From Auanema rhodensis (Eukaryota > Animalia > Nematoda), in the NCBI GenBank assembly GCA_964057225.1, contig OZ059900.1, forward strand, positions 10,044,001 to 10,108,000: 64,000 bases of DNA. The letters run 5' to 3'. Positions 3,378 to 43,148 of this stretch are shown one piece after another. The notes below the pieces were generated by a model. The model had not been told where the DNA came from. It worked only from the letters and a program-made list of their open reading frames with translations, and did no database searches. The stretch's first letter is position 1; every line of letters starts with the position of its first letter. The position numbers and the translations under genes are program-made.

Positions 3378-3496
3378 GCTTACGACCATACCACGTTGAA
3401 AGTACGCCATCCCGTCCGATCTGGCAAGTCAAGCAACGTTGGGCCCGGTTAGTACTTGGATCGGAGACGGCTTGGGAATCCCGGGTGCCGTAAGCT
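3378..3496 (+). rRNA. 5S rRNA gene, copy 1
   Basis: 119 nt GCTTACGACCATACCACGTTGAA...GTAAGCT, closely matching nematode 5S, followed by a Pol III T-run terminator. Confidence 0.99.
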
Positions 3497-3581: not shown

Positions 3582-4033
3582 GATATGTCATCATAACATA
3601 TTCAAATAAATTTTATTTTTATTGATTTTTATTTGTTATTTTAAATTCTACGCACCAATTGCTTAGAACAATGTTTGCAATATTTTCATTCATAATTAGC
3701 AAGAGAAGTACCTAGTGTTAAACAGAATTTGTTATATACGTATGTCTAGTTAAGACATTTAAGAGATACGGTAACTGTGAAAGGGCACCTGTAAATAAGT
3801 AGCTGTAAATTAAAAAAGTTTTAGGCCGGAATAATCGTTATTTCGAATTATTCAAATCTAATCAATATATCTCAATATATTGATTTTTTTCTTAATTGCC
3901 TCCATTGTTTTTTGTTTGCATTTTTTATTTCTTCTCGTTGCAGGTATTGACAACTGCTGCCTTTTTAATTTTTCGTTACTGATTCTCAATCGTAAGTTTG
4001 TTGTTGTTTTATTTATTATTCATCGTATTGAAG

Positions 4034-5034
4034 ATGGACAGATTTGGTTCTGCCGCAGGAAAAGATAATTTAATTGAATTGCTTATGAACGATGCAGAGT
4101 CTGAAAATGCATCTGATTTTATTATTCGAGCATTCGAACAATCAGTCGGGCCGGCTCCCATAATTTTACCTAGAGTTGAGCATTTAGCCTTCTCATTTCC
4201 TCTTGTTGATCGCCCTGCTGATCAATTTGTTTCTCCACCTGTAGGAGAAAGGCTTGAGAATGACATTTTAGACAATTTGGTAGGAGAAGACATCTATTCT
4301 GATTCTGAAGATATGGGAATATATTGGGTAAATATGCTTAAAGTAAGAAATTTCGAAGAATTTTTATTTCTAGGAAGACCCGACACAGGAAGATGAAACG
4401 GTGCCAGAAAATGTCAACGATACATCTATTGAAATACTCGAAGAAGACACGATTCCGCTTTCATCAGTGCTCAATGAAAATATGCCAGGCGAATATGAAG
4501 CACATGATGAAGACAACGGAATTGTAAGTCATTTTTCACTCAGTTATTGAAAAAAACGTTTGTTTTCAGGAAACTATCGACCTTACTGGAGAAGATGCTG
4601 ATAATGATACTAATCGTTTCTCTTTCAATTCTTCGAATACTTTGGTATTCAAGCTTGTAATATAAATTTTTATAATTATTTCATTTTTTCAGAGAAATCA
4701 TTATGATCTGGCTAATGATAATCAGAATATGTTAATTAACCGTGAATCAGATGATGAAAACAACGGGATTGTAAGTCATTTTACTCTCAGTTATTGAAAA
4801 AAATGTTTTTTTTTTGAGGAAACTATCGACCTCACTGGAGATGTTCCTGTACATGAGCTTGCTGATGAAAACCCAATGGAGACGGCTTTAGACATCGAGA
4901 ATAGGGAGAATGTACGCGACTCTGATAATACTGCAAGTCCTATTAGATATAGAACTGTTACGACTATTCTGATGCTGCCAGGTGGTGAAAGAAAGTTTAT
5001 CACTAGCGAAGAACCCGAACTGAATTTGTTGTGA
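4034..5034 (+). CDS. Acidic disordered orphan protein with repeated IDLT (SIM-like) motifs (cargo gene A)
   Basis: Five phase-0 exons splice into one frame: MDRFGSAAGK...GIYW/EDPTQED...DNGI/ETIDLTGED...NTL/RNHYDLAND...NNGI/ETIDLTGDV...KFITSEEPELNLL*. Preceded by a 48-nt 5'UTR exon. The last acceptor is a weak GAG. Confidence 0.75.
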
Positions 5035-7653: not shown

Positions 7654-8124
7654 TTGAACTTCCTCTGCTATTTGAAGCCTCACTTATTTTTTTTTGAATT
7701 AGGATATTCAATTTTGAGTTCTTTTTTCGAAAAAAAAGTTTTTAATTTATATAATTTTCTATTGTTTTCCAATTTTCTAGTGATTTCTCTATGTTTCTTT
7801 CTATCGTTTTCCAATTTTTTAGTGATTTTCAAATGTTTACAATAAAATATTTGTAGAAGCTGTTTAAATCACTTTTGGTTTTTTTTAAGAACTAATCGAA
7901 TTTGTAAAACTTGAATTAAATCTTACATTTTTACAAACAAATAGGGTTCACGTGAACAAAGTGAGAGAATTGATTTCACAGTTTAGAAAGAATAATATAT
8001 GGTTTTACCTTCATAACGCGATGATTAATACAATATCCGGACAGAGTATTGCCCAGATGTTTCATTTCTGATACAGCGGTCAGCGAAGTTCACAATTATA
8101 ACCGCAAAACTAAACATTACCTTC

Positions 8125-9050: not shown

Positions 9051-10295
9051 ATGCATCGCAACTCTGCAAATTGGCAAAATGCGTCGAGTGAAAAGAATAT
9101 TTTTTTTAATCTGTACGTTGTTTTTTTAAATTAGAAATTTCTGTTTTTTATTTTATAACATTTTGTATTTTGTGTACATGAATAAACATTTAATACACAT
9201 CTAAAGATATTTTTTAATCAATAGTATGATATAAGATGTTAATCAATATTATATATTGTTGTTTAAATTAGATGAACTGCTTGCTCCATTTAGAAAAACT
9301 GTTTGCTCTATTAATACGCGGGAATATATTATATTTTAAATAAAAAATACTCCAAATGTAATAATGATTATATTTCCAACTATTATTTTTTCTTATATAT
9401 ATATATAGCTAGTTAGATACTTTTTTTTCGAAATTATTGTTTAAAATTTGATAACAACATGACAGTTCCAAAGCCATTGATGACAGAATATGAGGAGACT
9501 AGAAGGTATTTCAAAGAAATTATAGATAACAAGGATTAAACATAGTGAGTTGTAAACTATATGCTATATTCTAAAACTTTTTGCCTTTGTCTTGTGAATT
9601 ATGTTATTTGTATTCAAATAACTTGATTTTATTCTGTGAATATGCTACGATTTGTTTTTTTATTTTTGAATTAGAACTTGTTTAAGGTTATGATGACCGC
9701 AAGACTTTTCATAATTTTTCCAATTTGTGATGTTATAAAGAAAATAAAAATTTTATAAATGGTTAAAGCTTTTATATGTTTGACATACCATTATATTTCA
9801 TTTGAAATGAGAAATTTGGGCGTTTTCCTGAAAATGTATTTTAGAGAGTTGTGGTGTACGGTATATTATATTTTTTTTAAAATATTTCCCTTCAAATGTT
9901 TCTTTTTATCTATATATTCATATGGAACTATATATTAAAAATATATTTGTATATAAGTTGATGAAGGGGGGAAGAGCACCACTACTGACATGAGTTCATG
10001 AAGATCACAGGTACTCGAAAAAAAATTCTGAAAAAAATTTTTTTTTGTGATTTTATATAAAAACTTTATATTTCTCATTATTATTATTATTATTATTATT
10101 TATATATATTTAATAATTTAAAGATAGAAAAAACAAAAAATAAACCAATTGACCAAATCTTACCCCTCACGTAAGTCATTAATGACCGGTACACCGAAAA
10201 TAGTCAAATCTGACACTTGTGGTCAAAAGAGCGAGTGCACTCGTATGAAGTACGATACATAATCTCAATGTTTATGTTTCTGACGACGTTGCAGT

Positions 10296-10484
10296 ATCGC
10301 TTCTCGGCCTTTTGGCTAAGATCAAAGTGTAGTAATCGTTCTTATCGAATTAACCTTCGATATGTGTTCCATTGGTTCACAATAAGGTTAACCGATTTTT
10401 GAGACCTGAGGTAGATGCTGGCTTGCTAGCTCCATCTCACGGGTCGACCCGCTCTTGCACTGCTGGCGGGAACGGCCCATCCCC
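10296..10484 (+). ncRNA. U2 snRNA gene (variant immediately 3' of the branch-site sequence)
   Basis: ATCGCTTCTCGGCCTTTTGGCTAAGATCAAAGTGTAGTA, stems IIa/IIb, Sm site GATTTTTG, stem III and stem IV loop TTGCACTG. Reads GTAGTAATCGTT instead of canonical GTAGTATCTGTT. Confidence 0.93.
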
Positions 10485-12811
10485 TTTGGGGGGAATAATC
10501 GTTCTTATCGAATTAACCTTCGATATGTGTTCCATTGGTTCACAATAAGGTTAACCGATTTTTGAGACCTGAGGTAGATGCTGGCTTGCTAGCTCCATCT
10601 CACGGGTCGACCCGCTCTTGCACTGCTGGCGGGAACGGCCCATCCCCTTTGGGGGGAATAATCGTTCTTATCGAATTAACCTTCGATATGTGTTCCATTG
10701 GTTCACAATAAGGTTAACCGATTTTTGAGACCTGAGGTAGATGCTGGCTTGCTAGCTCCATCTCACGGGTCGACCCGCTCTTGCACTGCTGGCGGGAACG
10801 GCCCATCCCCTTTGGGGGGAATAATCGTTCTTATCGAATTAACCTTCGATATGTGTTCCATTGGTTCACAATAAGGTTAACCGATTTTTGAGACCTGAGG
10901 TAGATGCTGGCTTGCTAGCTCCATCTCACGGGTCGACCCGCTCTTGCACTGCTGGCGGGAACGGCCCATCCCCTTTGGGGGGAATAATCGTTCTTATCGA
11001 ATTAACCTTCGATATGTGTTCCATTGGTTCACAATAAGGTTAACCGATTTTTGAGACTTGAGGTAGATGCTGGCTTGCTAGCTCCATCTCACGGGTCGAC
11101 CCGCTCTTGCACTGCTGGCGGGAACGGCCCATCCCCTTTAGGGGAGAATAATCGTTCTTATCGAATTAACCTTCGATATGTGTTCCATTGGTTCACAATA
11201 AGGTTAACCGATTTTTGAGACCTGAGGTAGATGCTGGCTTGCTAGCTCCATCTCACGGGTCGACCCGCTCTTGCACTGCTGGCGGGAACGGCCCATCCCC
11301 TTTGGGGGGAATAATCGTTCTTATCGAATTAACCTTCGATATGTGTTCCATTGGTTCACAATAAGGTTAACCGATTTTTGAGACCTGAGGTAGATGCTGG
11401 CTTGCTAGCTCCATCTCACGGGTCGACCCGCTCTTGCACTGCTGGCGGGAACGGCCCATCCCCTTTAGGGGAGAATAATCGTTCTTATCGAATTAACCTT
11501 CGATATGTGTTCCATTGGTTCACAATAAGGTTAACCGATTTTTGAGACCTGAGGTAGATGCTGGCTTGCTAGCTCCATCTCACGGGTCGACCCGCTCTTG
11601 CACTGCTGGCGGGAACGGCCCATCCCCTTTGGGGGGAATAATCGTTCTTATCGAATTAACCTTCGATATGTGTTCCATTGGTTCACAATGAGGTTAACCG
11701 ATTTTTGAGACTTGAGGTAGATGCTGGCTTGCTAGCTCCATCTCACGGGTCGACCCGCTCTTGCACTGCTGGCGGGAACGGCCCATCCCCTTTGGGGGGA
11801 ATAATCGTTCTTATCGAATTAACCTTCGATATGTGTTCCATTGGTTCACAATAAGGTTAACCGATTTTTGAGACTTGAGGTAGATGCTGGCTTGCTAGCT
11901 CCATCTCACGGGGACTCTCTGGTCGACCCGCTCTTGCACTGCTGGCGGGAACGGCCCATCCCCTTTGGGGGGAATAATCGTTCTTATCGAATTAACCTTC
12001 GATATGTGTTCCATTGGTTCACAATAAGGTTAACCGATTTTTGAGACCTGAGGTAGATGCTGGCTTGCTAGCTCCATCTCACGGGTCGACCCGCTCTTGC
12101 ACTGCTGGCGGGAACGGCCCATCCCCTTTGGGGGGAATAATCGTTCTTATCGAATTAACCTTCGATATGTGTTCCATTGGTTCACAATAAGGTTAACCGA
12201 TTTTTGAGACTTGAGGTAGATGCTGGCTTGCTAGCTCCATCTCACGGGTCGACCCGCTCTTGCACTGCTGGCGGGAACGGCCCATCCCCTTTAGGGGAGA
12301 ATAATCGTTCTTATCGAATTAACCTTCGATATGTGTTCCATTGGTTCACAATAAGGTTAACCGATTTTTGAGACCTGAGGTAGATGCTGGCTTGCTAGCT
12401 CCATCTCACGGGTCGACCCGCTCTTGCACTGCTGGCGGGAACGGCCCATCCCCTTTGGGGGGAATAATCGTTCTTATCGAATTAACCTTCGATATGTGTT
12501 CCATTGGTTCACAATAAGGTTAACCGATTTTTGAGACCTGAGGTAGATGCTGGCTTGCTAGCTCCATCTCACGGGGACTCTCTGGTCGACCCGCTCTTGC
12601 ACTGCTGGCGGGAACGGCCCATCCCCTTTGGGGGGAATAATCGTTCTTATCGAATTAACCTTCGATATGTGTTCCATTGGTTCACAATAAGGTTAACCGA
12701 TTTTTGAGACTTGAGGTAGATGCTGGCTTGCTAGCTCCATCTCACGGGGACTCTCTGGTCGACCCGCTCTTGCACTGCTGGCGGGAACGGCCCATCCCCT
12801 TTGGGGGAGAA
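10333..12811 (+). repeat. Tandem array of 15 units (163-174 bp) of 5'-truncated U2 snRNA
   Basis: Units start TAATCGTTCTT at 10333, 10496, 10659, 10822, 10985, 11149, 11312, 11476, 11639, 11802, 11975, 12138, 12302, 12465 and 12638. Each ends TCCCCTTT(G/A)GGGG..GAA. Confidence 0.98.
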
Positions 12812-12960
12812 TAATCGTTCTTATCGAAATAACTCGGTATGTGTTACCATCATAACACCGTGAGTAATGCTAAATTCCAGACATAGTATTACCCAGATGT
12901 TTTATTTCTGCCAGAAGTTGCACACTTTCTGATACCAGGGTCAGCGGAGCTCACTACACT
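12812..12960 (+). other. Degenerate U2 stem-II copy fused to the 5S upstream module
   Basis: TAATCGTTCTTATCGAAATAACTCGGTATGTGTT..., then CATCATAAC..GTGAGTAATGCTAAA..CAGAC.TAGTATT.CCCAGATGTTT...GGTCAGCG, homologous to the sequence upstream of all four 5S genes. Confidence 0.8.
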
Positions 12961-14363
12961 AAGTTTTCTCAAACCTATTGACAAATCAAAAATAGAAGAA
13001 ATTGCTCTACGTGTAGAATATGAAAGTTTGTCTAGATTATTATTTCTACTGAACCTCATTGTACTTTCAGATGGTGATGTTTCATTGTTTTTCGATCGTC
13101 TTGATTTAGATGAAGGCGAAGGAATTGAATTCATGCAGTCACGTGGTTTTTGACTCCCAGAAGACAACAAAGAGGACATACTGAATGATTATCGAAGATA
13201 TAATTAATTGAACTTCCTCTGCTATTGGAAGCCTCGCTTATTTTTTTTTTGAATTAGGATATTCAATTTTGAGTTCTTTTTTCGAAAAAAAAGTTTTTAA
13301 TTTATATAATTTTCTATTGTTTTCCAATTTTTATGTGATTTCTCTATGTTTCTTTCTATCGTTTTCCAATTTTTTAGTGATTTTCAAATGTTTACAATAA
13401 AATATTTGTAGAAGCTGTTTGAATCACTTTTGGTTTTTTTTAAGAACTAATCGAATTTGTAAAACTTGAATTAAATCTTACATTTTTACAAACAAATAGG
13501 GTTCACGTGAACAAAGTGAGAGAATTGATTTCACAGTTTAGAAAGAATAATATATGGCTTTACCCTCACAACGCGATGATTAATCCAATATCCGGACAGA
13601 GTATTGCCCAAATGTTTCATTTCTGATACCACGGTCAGCGAAGTTCACAATTATAACCGCAAAACTAAAGTTGAAGTTCGCTTACGACCATACCACGTTG
13701 AAAGTACGCCATCCCGTCCGATCTGGCAAGTCAAGCAACGTTGGGCCCGGTTAGTACTTGGATCGGAGACGGCTTGGGAATCCCGGGTGCCGTAAGCTTT
13801 TTCATTTTGATTTTGAATAGTAGTGAATTAAGGAATACGGTAACTTGAGGTAATTACGTATGTGCTCTAGTGATAAGCGGGAAGATATGTCATAAAAACA
13901 TATTCAAATAAATTTTATTTTTATTGATTTTTATTTGTTATTTTAAATTCTACGCACCAATTGCTTAGAACAATGTTTGCAATATTTTCATTTATAATTA
14001 GCAAGAGAAGTACCTAGTGTTAAACAGAATTTGTTATATACGTATGTCTAGTTAAGACATTTAAGAGATACGGTAACTGTGAAAGGGCACCTGTAAATAA
14101 GTAGCTGTAAATTAAAAAAGTTTTAGGCGGGAATAATCGTTATTTCGAATTATTCAAATCTAATCAATATATCTCAATATATTGATTTTTTTCTTAATTG
14201 CCTCCATTGTTTTTTGTTTGCATTTTATTTGTTTTTTTTTTTGCATTTTTTATTTCTTCTCGTTGCAGGTATTGACAACTGCTGCCTTTTTAATTTTTCG
14301 TTACTGATTCTCAATCGTAAGTTTGTTGTTGTTTTATTTATTATTCATCATATTGAAGATGGA
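12961..14363 (+). repeat. 5S cassette, copy 3 (5'-truncated; includes downstream promoter and 5'UTR)
   Basis: Near-identical to 2661-4038; identity ends just after the cargo ATG (GAAGATGGA). Confidence 0.93.
13680..13798 (+). rRNA. 5S rRNA gene, copy 3
   Basis: Identical 119-nt 5S followed by a T-run. Confidence 0.99.
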
Positions 14364-43029: not shown

Positions 43030-43148
43030 AGCTTACGGCACCCGGGATTCCCAAGCCGTCTCCGATCCAAGTACTAACCGGGCCCAACGTTGCTTGACTT
43101 GCCAGATCGGACGGGATGGCGTACTTTCAACGTGGTATGGTCGTAAGC
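43030..43148 (-). rRNA. 5S rRNA gene, copy 4 (dispersed, inverted)
   Basis: Reverse complement identical to copies 1-3, with a T-run terminator. Confidence 0.99.

What the first reader, a model, noticed from the sequence alone, without database searches (positions are those of the whole stretch)
10296..12860. U2 snRNA gene extended by 14 extra head-less U2 copies starting exactly at the branch-site sequence
Seen: after the U2 gene, U2 nt ~38-189 plus a short GC hairpin (TCCCC-TTT-GGGG) repeat in tandem, 15 units in all. Every unit keeps stems IIa/IIb, the Sm site, stem III and the stem IV loop, but lacks the U6-pairing 5' end and the GUAGUA branch-site sequence. Established: Sm binds the AU5G site, U2A'/U2B'' bind stem-loop IV, and the U2-specific non-LTR retrotransposons Keno and Utopia insert at about this U2 position. 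Inference: the array could be (i) a footprint of repeated events by a U2-targeting retroelement acting in trans, (ii) a rolling-circle product, or (iii) unequal crossing-over seeded by the downstream U2-like sequence. A read-through RNA would be a multivalent Sm/U2B'' decoy, or a precursor of ~150-nt U2-like RNAs.
Basis: partly seen in the sequence, partly recalled or inferred. Interest (0 to 1): 0.85.

Follow-up and report, generated by a model that had tools for sequence, protein, structure and literature searches.

The report
U2 gene with headless-copy tail array
A normal U2 spliceosomal RNA gene in this nematode-type genome is followed by 14 promoter-less copies of its own back part, which begin at the spot where a resident U2-specific jumping gene (Utopia type) cuts; it is most likely a scar of that activity grown by unequal crossing-over, not a new RNA gene.

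Summary
An intact U2 gene (10296-10485) is followed by 14 complete head-less units (U2 nt 38-190 plus a 10-11 nt tail) and a 39-nt partial unit.

The "GC hairpin" is not an addition. It is the conserved native 3' flank of every U2 gene here.

New points:
- The same tail|nt-38 junction occurs at all eight U2 loci of this chromosome, with 0.5 to 14 units, plus old relics. It is absent from the large U2 array on another contig. That points to one old founding event, not 14.
- The genome carries a young, strictly U2-array-bound Utopia-type retrotransposon (RT plus restriction-like endonuclease). Its 3' junction with U2 falls on the same nucleotide, 38.
- The unit variants are mosaic and form multi-unit blocks, so the array grew by unequal crossing-over or gene conversion.
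- Only one snRNA promoter block exists, upstream of the gene.

Best reading: a neutral U2-derived mini-satellite, seeded at the Utopia site and then expanded at the DNA level.

RNA output and copy number could not be tested.

The scan already reported the sister locus 76 kb away (s1-378812) with the same reading.

The parts
10235..10254 (+). snRNA proximal-promoter-like block (about -61 to -42 of U2), conserved upstream of all U2 gene types of this genome; the only copy in the window
   Evidence: Upstream alignments by eye. A degenerate pattern search gives 1 match in 64 kb, none inside the array; the match is expected, since the pattern was built from these U2 upstream regions, this one included.
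10296..10485 (+). Intact U2 snRNA gene, 100% identical to seven other U2 genes on the same contig
   Evidence: Rfam RF00004 146.7 bits, model 1-192; own-genome search; BLAST
10480..10495 (+). Native 3' hairpin (CCCC-TTT-GGGG) plus GGAA tail; the same piece ends every unit
   Evidence: Conserved with compensatory changes in U2 loci of contigs C1, C3, C4 and C5 and in metagenomic U2 genes L052 and L055
10496..12811 (+). 14 head-less units (U2 nt 38-190 + 10-11 nt tail). Seven haplotypes in the order a a a a b a c a d e a b a f g, counting the gene's own 38-190 part as the first a
   Evidence: Rfam alignment of one unit; no ORF of 70 aa or more
12812..12850 (+). Terminal partial unit (U2 nt 38-77, 88% identical), the most diverged piece; the same partial piece ends an old relic locus on contig C5
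12841..12956 (+). Copy of the sequence that lies immediately upstream of 5S genes (80-85% identical to that module elsewhere)
13680..13798 (+). 5S rRNA gene downstream of the array, same strand
   Evidence: Rfam RF00001 107.5 bits

Best explanation
The array is a promoter-less, probably neutral mini-satellite made of the 3' four-fifths of U2 (nt 38 to the 3' hairpin and tail). Its founding junction (U2 3' tail joined to U2 nt 38) arose once, long ago. It arose at the nucleotide where the resident U2-specific Utopia-type non-LTR retrotransposon nicks U2. The most likely route is that the element's reverse transcriptase primed from that nick on an RNA ending in the U2 3' tail, either a pre-U2 or a Utopia/U2 co-transcript. 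The 5' side would then have been resolved by homology with the target gene, giving a clean duplication of nt 38 to tail. An alternative route is insertion of a U2-headed element relic. After that, the number of units changed locus by locus through unequal crossing-over and gene conversion at the DNA level. That produced 14 units here and 0.5-6 at the sister loci. Shown here: the anatomy, the shared junction, the coincidence with the Utopia site, the mosaic units, and the single promoter. Inferred: the RNA-templated founding step and the lack of function.
For: Every head-less unit starts at T38. In the contig C1 array at least seven head-less U2 copies start at nt 38 directly after the same element 3' end, and one starts at nt 39 after a short non-coding insert. 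A full-length element lies between U2 nt 2-96 and U2 nt 38-190. Its 1092-aa ORF has RVT_1 (3e-28) and matches solved R2 proteins over the RT and over the C-terminal zinc finger plus restriction-like endonuclease. All 40 scored copies of its 3' end lie in the C1 U2 region, and 27 of them are 100% identical. Published Utopia and Keno 3' junctions are at U2 nt 39, which is nt 40 here (PMC4640811). A scorpion homologue (43% identity) sits in U2 with that junction. The unit contains nothing beyond the conserved 3' hairpin + AGAA, so it holds only sequence expected in a U2 transcript. The junction pattern has 36 hits against 0 in the control. They lie at the eight C8 loci plus four one-mismatch relics, and none lies in C1. 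Unit numbers differ among paralogous loci. All four combinations occur for C/T x 10-nt insertion and for C/T x tail type, identical units are interspersed, and the block a-b-a recurs at lag 7. There is one promoter-like block only.
Against: There is only one founding event, so the coincidence with the nick site (roughly a 1-2% chance for a random breakpoint within +/-1 nt of 190) cannot be replicated. A 4-nt microhomology (TAAT) between the ancestral flank (GAGAATAAT in the C4 locus and in metagenomic L054) and U2 nt 38-41 could by itself explain the junction. No tail|38 junction exists in the C1 array, where the element is active, so such events are at best rare. No element copy was found near the C8 loci among the 40 scored. 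The true 3' end of pre-U2 or mature U2 in this animal is unknown. No read data could be laid, so transcription is untested and the copy number rests on the assembly.
Confidence: 0.55

Rival explanations
1. Plain DNA-level partial duplication (replication slippage, or unequal exchange at the TAAT microhomology between the 3' flank and U2 nt 38-41), later expanded by unequal crossing-over. The match with the Utopia site is coincidence.
For: The flank GAGAATAAT is found at the single-copy C4 gene and in a metagenomic relative, giving a 4-nt overlap with U2 nt 38-41. The junction arose once. Growth is clearly at the DNA level. No element copies were seen on this contig.
Against: Both breakpoints fall on meaningful positions. 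The 5' one is at the same nucleotide as three other independent junction types at nt 38/39 in this genome. The 3' one is only a few bases past the conserved 3' hairpin. Many other 4-nt overlaps were available.
Confidence: 0.25
2. Each of the 14 units is a separate retro-insertion of a U2 transcript at the nick site of the gene.
For: The four gene-proximal copies of the unit sequence (the gene's own nt 38-190 plus the first three head-less units) are identical to each other, and the most distal unit keeps the ancestral tail. That is the gradient expected if new units enter at nt 37/38 of the gene.
Against: Identical variant units are interspersed (b at positions 5 and 12; a at 6, 8, 11 and 13). 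All four gamete combinations occur, and a three-unit block recurs. None of this can be made by proximal single-unit additions. No such junction exists in the C1 array, where the element is active.
Confidence: 0.08
3. The array is functional: read-through transcripts act as multivalent Sm/U2B'' decoys or are cut into ~150-nt U2-like RNAs.
For: Every unit keeps the Sm site, stem-loops III and IV and the 3' hairpin. Units are 97-100% identical.
Against: There is one promoter block only. The conserved 3'-end hairpin, probably a 3'-end signal (my inference), lies directly after the gene. Internal products would lack a cap (general knowledge). Sister loci carry decayed, internally deleted or truncated units, so there is no purifying selection on the units. 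High identity is explained by homogenisation. No RNA run was listed among the holders of the stretch, which is weak evidence.
Confidence: 0.05
4. Rolling-circle origin (DNA circle, or a circular RNA copied by reverse transcriptase) gave a multimer in one step.
For: Perfect head-to-tail units with one junction type; four identical gene-proximal copies of the unit sequence.
Against: The same junction exists at loci with a single or partial unit and in 88%-identical relics, so it predates any multimer. The mosaic haplotypes need recombination anyway.
Confidence: 0.03
5. Assembly artefact: the true locus holds one or a few units.
For: No spanning reads could be examined. All public runs are kept as short contigs.
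Against: Seven distinct unit haplotypes occur in a fixed order. Arrays of other lengths occur at paralogous loci, including an inverted pair with 5 and 6 units. The assembly is chromosome-scale, 112 contigs. Eight runs from three studies hold at least half of the sampled words of the stretch.
Confidence: 0.03

Closest known systems
Utopia (and Keno) insertion scars in U2 genes (Kojima & Jurka 2015, PMC4640811)
   Same: The head-less U2 part begins right at or after the GUAGUA box: nt 39 in the paper, nt 38-40 here. The 5' U2 part is missing. The setting is an array of U2 genes, in a genome with an active Utopia-type element.
   Different: What precedes the head-less part here is not the element but the 3' tail of the preceding U2 copy. 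No element sequence lies in or next to the array.
U2_sat, the U2 gene-derived satellite of Ciona that YURE elements (Utopia relatives) insert into (mentioned in PMC4640811)
   Same: A tandem repeat derived from a U2 gene in a genome with Utopia-clade elements.
   Different: I could not see the unit boundaries of U2_sat, because the supplement text holds no sequence. Whether it starts at the nick site is therefore unknown. Here the array is still attached to an intact gene, and no insertions lie in it.
R2 retrotransposon and 28S co-transcripts: downstream target sequence on the RNA guides priming (Luan & Eickbush 1996, recalled from memory, not read here)
   Same: An endonuclease/RT of the same superfamily. 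The element is probably co-transcribed with its host gene, which makes RNAs ending in host-gene 3' sequence available at the nick.
   Different: For R2 this gives precise element insertion. A pure host-sequence retro-duplication is my inference, not a described outcome.
snRNA retro-pseudogenes (for example L1-made U6 chimeras, human U2 pseudogenes; from memory)
   Same: Promoter-less snRNA copies that may derive from RNA.
   Different: Those are dispersed, often 3'-truncated or chimeric. They are not tandem and not placed inside their own gene at a specific site.
Tandem snRNA gene arrays (this genome's C1 U2 array, 2.46-kb units; human RNU2 from memory)
   Same: Tandem organisation and homogenisation by unequal exchange.
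   Different: Those units are complete genes with promoters. Here the units are 163-nt gene fragments behind a single promoter.

Membership tests
U2 snRNA gene (Rfam RF00004), applied to the head-less units | 5' domain: stem I, U6-pairing sequences and the complete GUAGUA branch-site box | tested here: not met
   Units start at nt 38. In the Rfam alignment of a unit the 5' part has no real counterpart.
U2 snRNA gene (Rfam RF00004), applied to the head-less units | Stems IIa/IIb, Sm site, stem-loops III and IV | tested here: met
   Rfam alignment, 83 bits, high posterior over these parts.
U2 snRNA gene (Rfam RF00004), applied to the head-less units | Own upstream snRNA promoter element | tested here: not met
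   The block conserved upstream of all U2 gene types occurs once in the window, at 10235-10254.
Utopia non-LTR retrotransposons (for the element on contig C1 that defines the site) | Single ORF with RT, C-terminal zinc finger and PD..D/ExK restriction-like endonuclease | tested here: met
   RVT_1 at 3e-28. R2 protein structures match residues 237-771 and 903-1044, including the CCHC and PD...D...K positions.
Utopia non-LTR retrotransposons (for the element on contig C1 that defines the site) | Site-specific insertion in U2, with the 3' junction right after the GUAGUA box | tested here: met
   At least seven copies abut U2 nt 38. All 40 scored 3' ends lie in the U2 array region. The paper gives nt 39, which is nt 40 here, so agreement is within 0-2 nt of microhomology.
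Utopia non-LTR retrotransposons (for the element on contig C1 that defines the site) | RT groups with named Utopia families in a tree | not tested
   No named Utopia sequences were at hand. Indirect support: the best named homologues are from Globodera pallida and a scorpion, and the scorpion copy sits in U2 at the same site.
RNA-derived (retro) copy | The copy holds transcribed sequence only and ends at the RNA's 3' end | tested here: inconclusive
Satellite grown by unequal crossing-over | Copy-number variation among paralogous loci, mosaic (recombinant) units, multi-unit blocks | tested here: met
   0.5 to 14 units at eight loci. The four-gamete test is positive for two site pairs, and the a-b-a block recurs. 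TRF scores periods 163, 327 and 490 equally.

The most novel reading that the evidence does not exclude
A site-specific retrotransposon (Utopia) can copy its host gene's own transcript into the nick it makes in that gene. This would create a head-less tandem duplicate running from the nick site to the RNA 3' end, which then seeds a gene-derived satellite. It would be a concrete, testable route from a target-specific retroelement to a satellite, and a record of the pre-U2 3' end written into DNA.
Probability: 0.35. Interest if true: 0.65.

Novelty: new variant of a known kind. Interest (0 to 1): 0.45.

Why it matters
The finding links three things that are usually studied apart: a target-specific retrotransposon, the 3'-end formation of an snRNA, and the birth of a tandem repeat.

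If the founding junction was made by target-primed reverse transcription of a U2-tailed RNA, the locus is a natural example of a retroelement duplicating part of its target gene, not itself. It would also help explain U2-derived satellites such as the one reported in Ciona.

If the junction is only a microhomology duplication, the array is an ordinary pseudogene mini-satellite.

Either way, the eight loci with 0.5-14 units are a convenient marker of unequal exchange. The intact genes at their heads are probably among the working U2 genes of the animal.

Tried and rejected
There is therefore no read-level test of copy number, of junction-spanning RNA, or of the locus in the related organisms B and C.

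The flanks of the 40 element copies could not be fetched, and the exact element terminus could not be fixed from non-U2 insertions.

The closest metagenomic homologue contig (L047) ends before any U2 could appear. P0003 has no contig on record.

The supplement of PMC4640811 holds no U2_sat sequence. A literature search for truncated U2 tandem repeats gave nothing specific.

I tested whether the sequence after the terminal partial unit is the 5' end of the short U2-site element. There is no significant similarity: only a shared 10-nt start between the C1 relic and that element, and a weak resemblance to the window.

The bacterial promoter/terminator scan is irrelevant for this eukaryote. There are no ORFs in the array.

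Full report
**1. What is there**

Tandem Repeats Finder reports one array at 10333-12850 with period 163, 15.2 copies and 97% matches. Rfam finds a single full-length U2 gene at 10296-10485 (146.7 bits). It also finds 5S rRNA genes at 3378, 8125 and 13680 on the plus strand and at 43030 on the minus strand.

BLAST with the gene shows 14 units covering U2 nt 38-190, from 10496 to 12800. Each is followed by a 10-11 nt tail. A 39-nt partial unit (nt 38-77, 88% identical) lies at 12812-12850.

An Rfam alignment of one unit shows stems IIa/IIb, the Sm site and stem-loops III and IV. The 5' domain is missing. No ORF of 70 aa or more lies in the array.

- The units start at T38 and so keep the last UA of GUAGUA.
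- The "short GC hairpin" is not something added to the units (see section 3).

**2. The genome**

The window is contig C8, 10.044-10.108 Mb, of a 181-Mb assembly in 112 contigs. Several points suggest a nematode:
- The 5S sequence looks nematode-like to me (from memory).
- Contig C3 carries a large tandem cluster of full-length SL1-like genes, below Rfam's cut-off.
- The best named homologue of the retroelement described below is from Globodera pallida.

U2 genes fall into four groups:
- a large tandem array on contig C1 with 2.46-kb spacing;
- a single gene on C3;
- a single gene on C4;
- eight genes on C8 that are 100% identical to the window's gene.

**3. The hairpin and tail are native**

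All U2 gene types, including the single-copy C3 and C4 genes that have no array, are followed by CCCC-N3-GGGG plus (A)GAAT. The C1 type has TTCCC...GGGAA, a compensatory change. Two metagenomic U2 genes also fold a short hairpin at this position (L052 ACCCC...GGGGT; L055 has a different, weaker stem).

This is therefore a conserved 3'-end feature of U2 loci in this lineage. It is either part of the RNA or its 3'-end signal. A unit is simply U2 from nt 38 to the end of that feature.

**4. The same junction is at every C8 locus**

All eight C8 genes are followed, after the same tail, by U2 from nt 38 on. The amount differs between loci:
- a 68-nt piece at two loci;
- 114 nt at one locus;
- several decayed pieces at one locus;
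- one unit plus a deleted one at one locus;
- 5 and 6 units at an inverted pair of loci 76 kb downstream;
- 14 units here.

A pattern spanning the junction has 36 hits in the genome against 0 for the control. All are at these loci, plus four one-mismatch relics on C5 and at C8:9.14 Mb. None is in C1.

The C5 relic is 88% identical. It reads as an old U2 pseudogene, then the tail, then a nt 38-77 partial piece, followed by the same downstream start as in the window.

So the junction is old and arose once. The simplest ancestral state is gene + tail + about 40 nt of U2.

**5. A U2-specific retroelement cuts at the same nucleotide**

In the C1 array at least seven U2 copies lack nt 1-37. They are preceded by one and the same non-U2 sequence, which ends ...AACCAT directly before TAATCG.

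In L046 a full-length element lies between U2 nt 2-96 and U2 nt 38-190. Its 1092-aa ORF has a reverse-transcriptase domain. The ORF matches solved R2 proteins over the RT and over the C-terminal zinc finger and restriction-like endonuclease.

All 40 scored copies of the element's 3' end lie in C1 between 10.93 and 12.12 Mb, and 27 of them are 100% identical. It is therefore young and confined to the U2 array.

A short 783-nt non-coding insert sits between U2 1-79 and U2 39-190. The regular C1 unit carries a relic of such a junction 312 nt downstream of each gene.

Kojima and Jurka (PMC4640811) describe exactly this family. Utopia (restriction-like endonuclease) and the unrelated Keno share a 3' junction at U2 nt 39, the U2 5' part is often missing, and Utopia occurs in nematodes. 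This U2 has one extra A, so their nt 39 is nt 40 here. The two extra bases (TA) can be microhomology.

A scorpion homologue (43% identity) sits in U2 with its 3' junction right after GUAGUA, in tandem with a second copy.

The "U2-targeting element" it asked for exists in this genome.

**6. How the array grew**

The 15 copies of the unit sequence (the gene's own nt 38-190 part plus the 14 head-less units) fall into seven haplotypes, in the order a a a a b a c a d e a b a f g. These are defined by:
- a C/T site;
- a 10-nt insertion near U2 nt 150;
- three tail variants;
- one singleton.

All four combinations occur for C/T with the insertion, and for C/T with tail type. Identical units are interspersed, and the block a-b-a recurs seven units apart. 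TRF scores periods of one, two and three units equally.

This is the signature of unequal crossing-over and gene conversion. It is not what single additions at one end would give.

The terminal partial unit is the most diverged piece, as expected for the array edge or the original seed.

**7. How the junction arose (inference)**

Both ends of the unit fall on meaningful positions. The 5' end is at the Utopia nick. The 3' end is a few bases past the conserved 3' hairpin, so a unit holds only sequence expected in a U2 transcript.

I propose that the bottom-strand 3' end at the nick primed reverse transcription on an RNA ending in the U2 tail. That RNA would be either a pre-U2 or a Utopia/U2 co-transcript. 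The cDNA is homologous to the target, so the 5' side would be resolved by annealing. The result is gene + tail + head-less copy.

Priming would be helped by the overlap between the flank (GAGAATAAT in C4 and in metagenomic L054) and U2 TAAT.

The same overlap is also the main argument for the rival, a plain microhomology duplication. No such junction has formed in the C1 array, where the element is active.

My probabilities:
- about 0.55 for a Utopia-linked single seeding followed by DNA-level growth;
- 0.25 for coincidence;
- small values for the other readings.

**8. Function**

Only one copy of the promoter-like block conserved upstream of all U2 genes exists in the window, at 10235-10254. 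The conserved 3'-end hairpin and tail follow the gene directly and recur after each unit.

Sister loci carry deleted and decayed units, so the units are not under selection.

A decoy or precursor role is therefore unlikely (about 0.05), but it was not tested. Among 20 public runs none is on record as RNA.

**9. Earlier notes of this scan**

I read these after I had reached the reading above.
- Another agent reported the sister locus with 5-6 units (s1-378812) and also read it as a by-product of the U2-specific element.
- Other notes describe the Utopia-type element, its U2(1-96) head, and the short non-coding riders.
- My own analyses of those loci agree with them.

**10. Verdict**

The array is a real and neatly explained structure. 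It is a new variant of known kinds: a gene-derived mini-satellite and a Utopia target-site scar. It is not a new RNA gene.

What remains interesting is the possible retro-duplication mechanism. That can be tested by mapping the U2 3' end and by a priming assay.

Noticed in passing
window 10480-10495; L037, L038, L004, L048, L052, L055: A CCCC-N3-GGGG hairpin followed by (A)GAAT lies at the 3' end or flank of every U2 gene type of this genome, with compensatory changes (TTCCC/GGGAA); two metagenomic U2 genes also fold a hairpin there (ACCCC/GGGGT in L052). It looks like a lineage-specific 3'-terminal stem or 3'-end signal of U2.
   Followed up: partly
L046 (contig C1:11146500-11156400), minus strand: A full-length Utopia-type element (ORF 1092 aa, RT plus zinc finger plus restriction-like endonuclease) is flanked by U2 nt 2-96 and nt 38-190. 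At least 40 copies of its 3' end lie in the C1 U2 array region, all 40 scored, and 27 of them are identical.
   Followed up: yes
L042; L046 reverse complement 3836-4849: A 783-nt non-coding insert lies between U2 1-79 and U2 39-190. Every regular C1 array unit carries a relic of this kind of junction (U2 39-78) 312 nt downstream of the gene.
   Followed up: partly
window units at 11803, 12466, 12639; L031-L033: There is a second break hot spot near U2 nt 150. Three window units have a 10-nt insertion there, and head-less pieces at three sister loci end at nt 151-152.
   Followed up: no
window 10335-10342 versus L052, L055, L056: This genome's U2 reads AATCG right after GUAGUA, where metagenomic relatives and a scorpion have the usual TCTG (or TTCTG). 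The change sits at the Utopia cut site.
   Followed up: no
L034 (contig C8:10180902-10190901): Two U2 genes in inverted orientation, 6.3 kb apart, carry 5 and 6 head-less units. It looks like a palindromic duplication of the whole locus.
   Followed up: partly
window 12841-12956, 13566-13680, 8002-8070: The roughly 110 bp after the array are an extra copy (80-85%) of the sequence that lies immediately upstream of 5S genes. U2 loci of this contig are regularly linked to a 5S gene on the same strand.
   Followed up: partly
L054 (metagenome contig, minus strand): A U2-like gene whose nt 39-190 part is normal but whose 5' part has a different sequence in place of the branch-site box. It is either a variant snRNA or a pseudogene of an unknown soil eukaryote. 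Its flank reads GAATAATAC, like the C4 locus here.
   Followed up: no
contig C3:6.74-7.10 Mb of the same genome: A large tandem cluster of full-length SL1-like spliced-leader genes (252/504-bp spacing) scores 54-62 bits, below Rfam's 75-bit cut-off.
   Followed up: no
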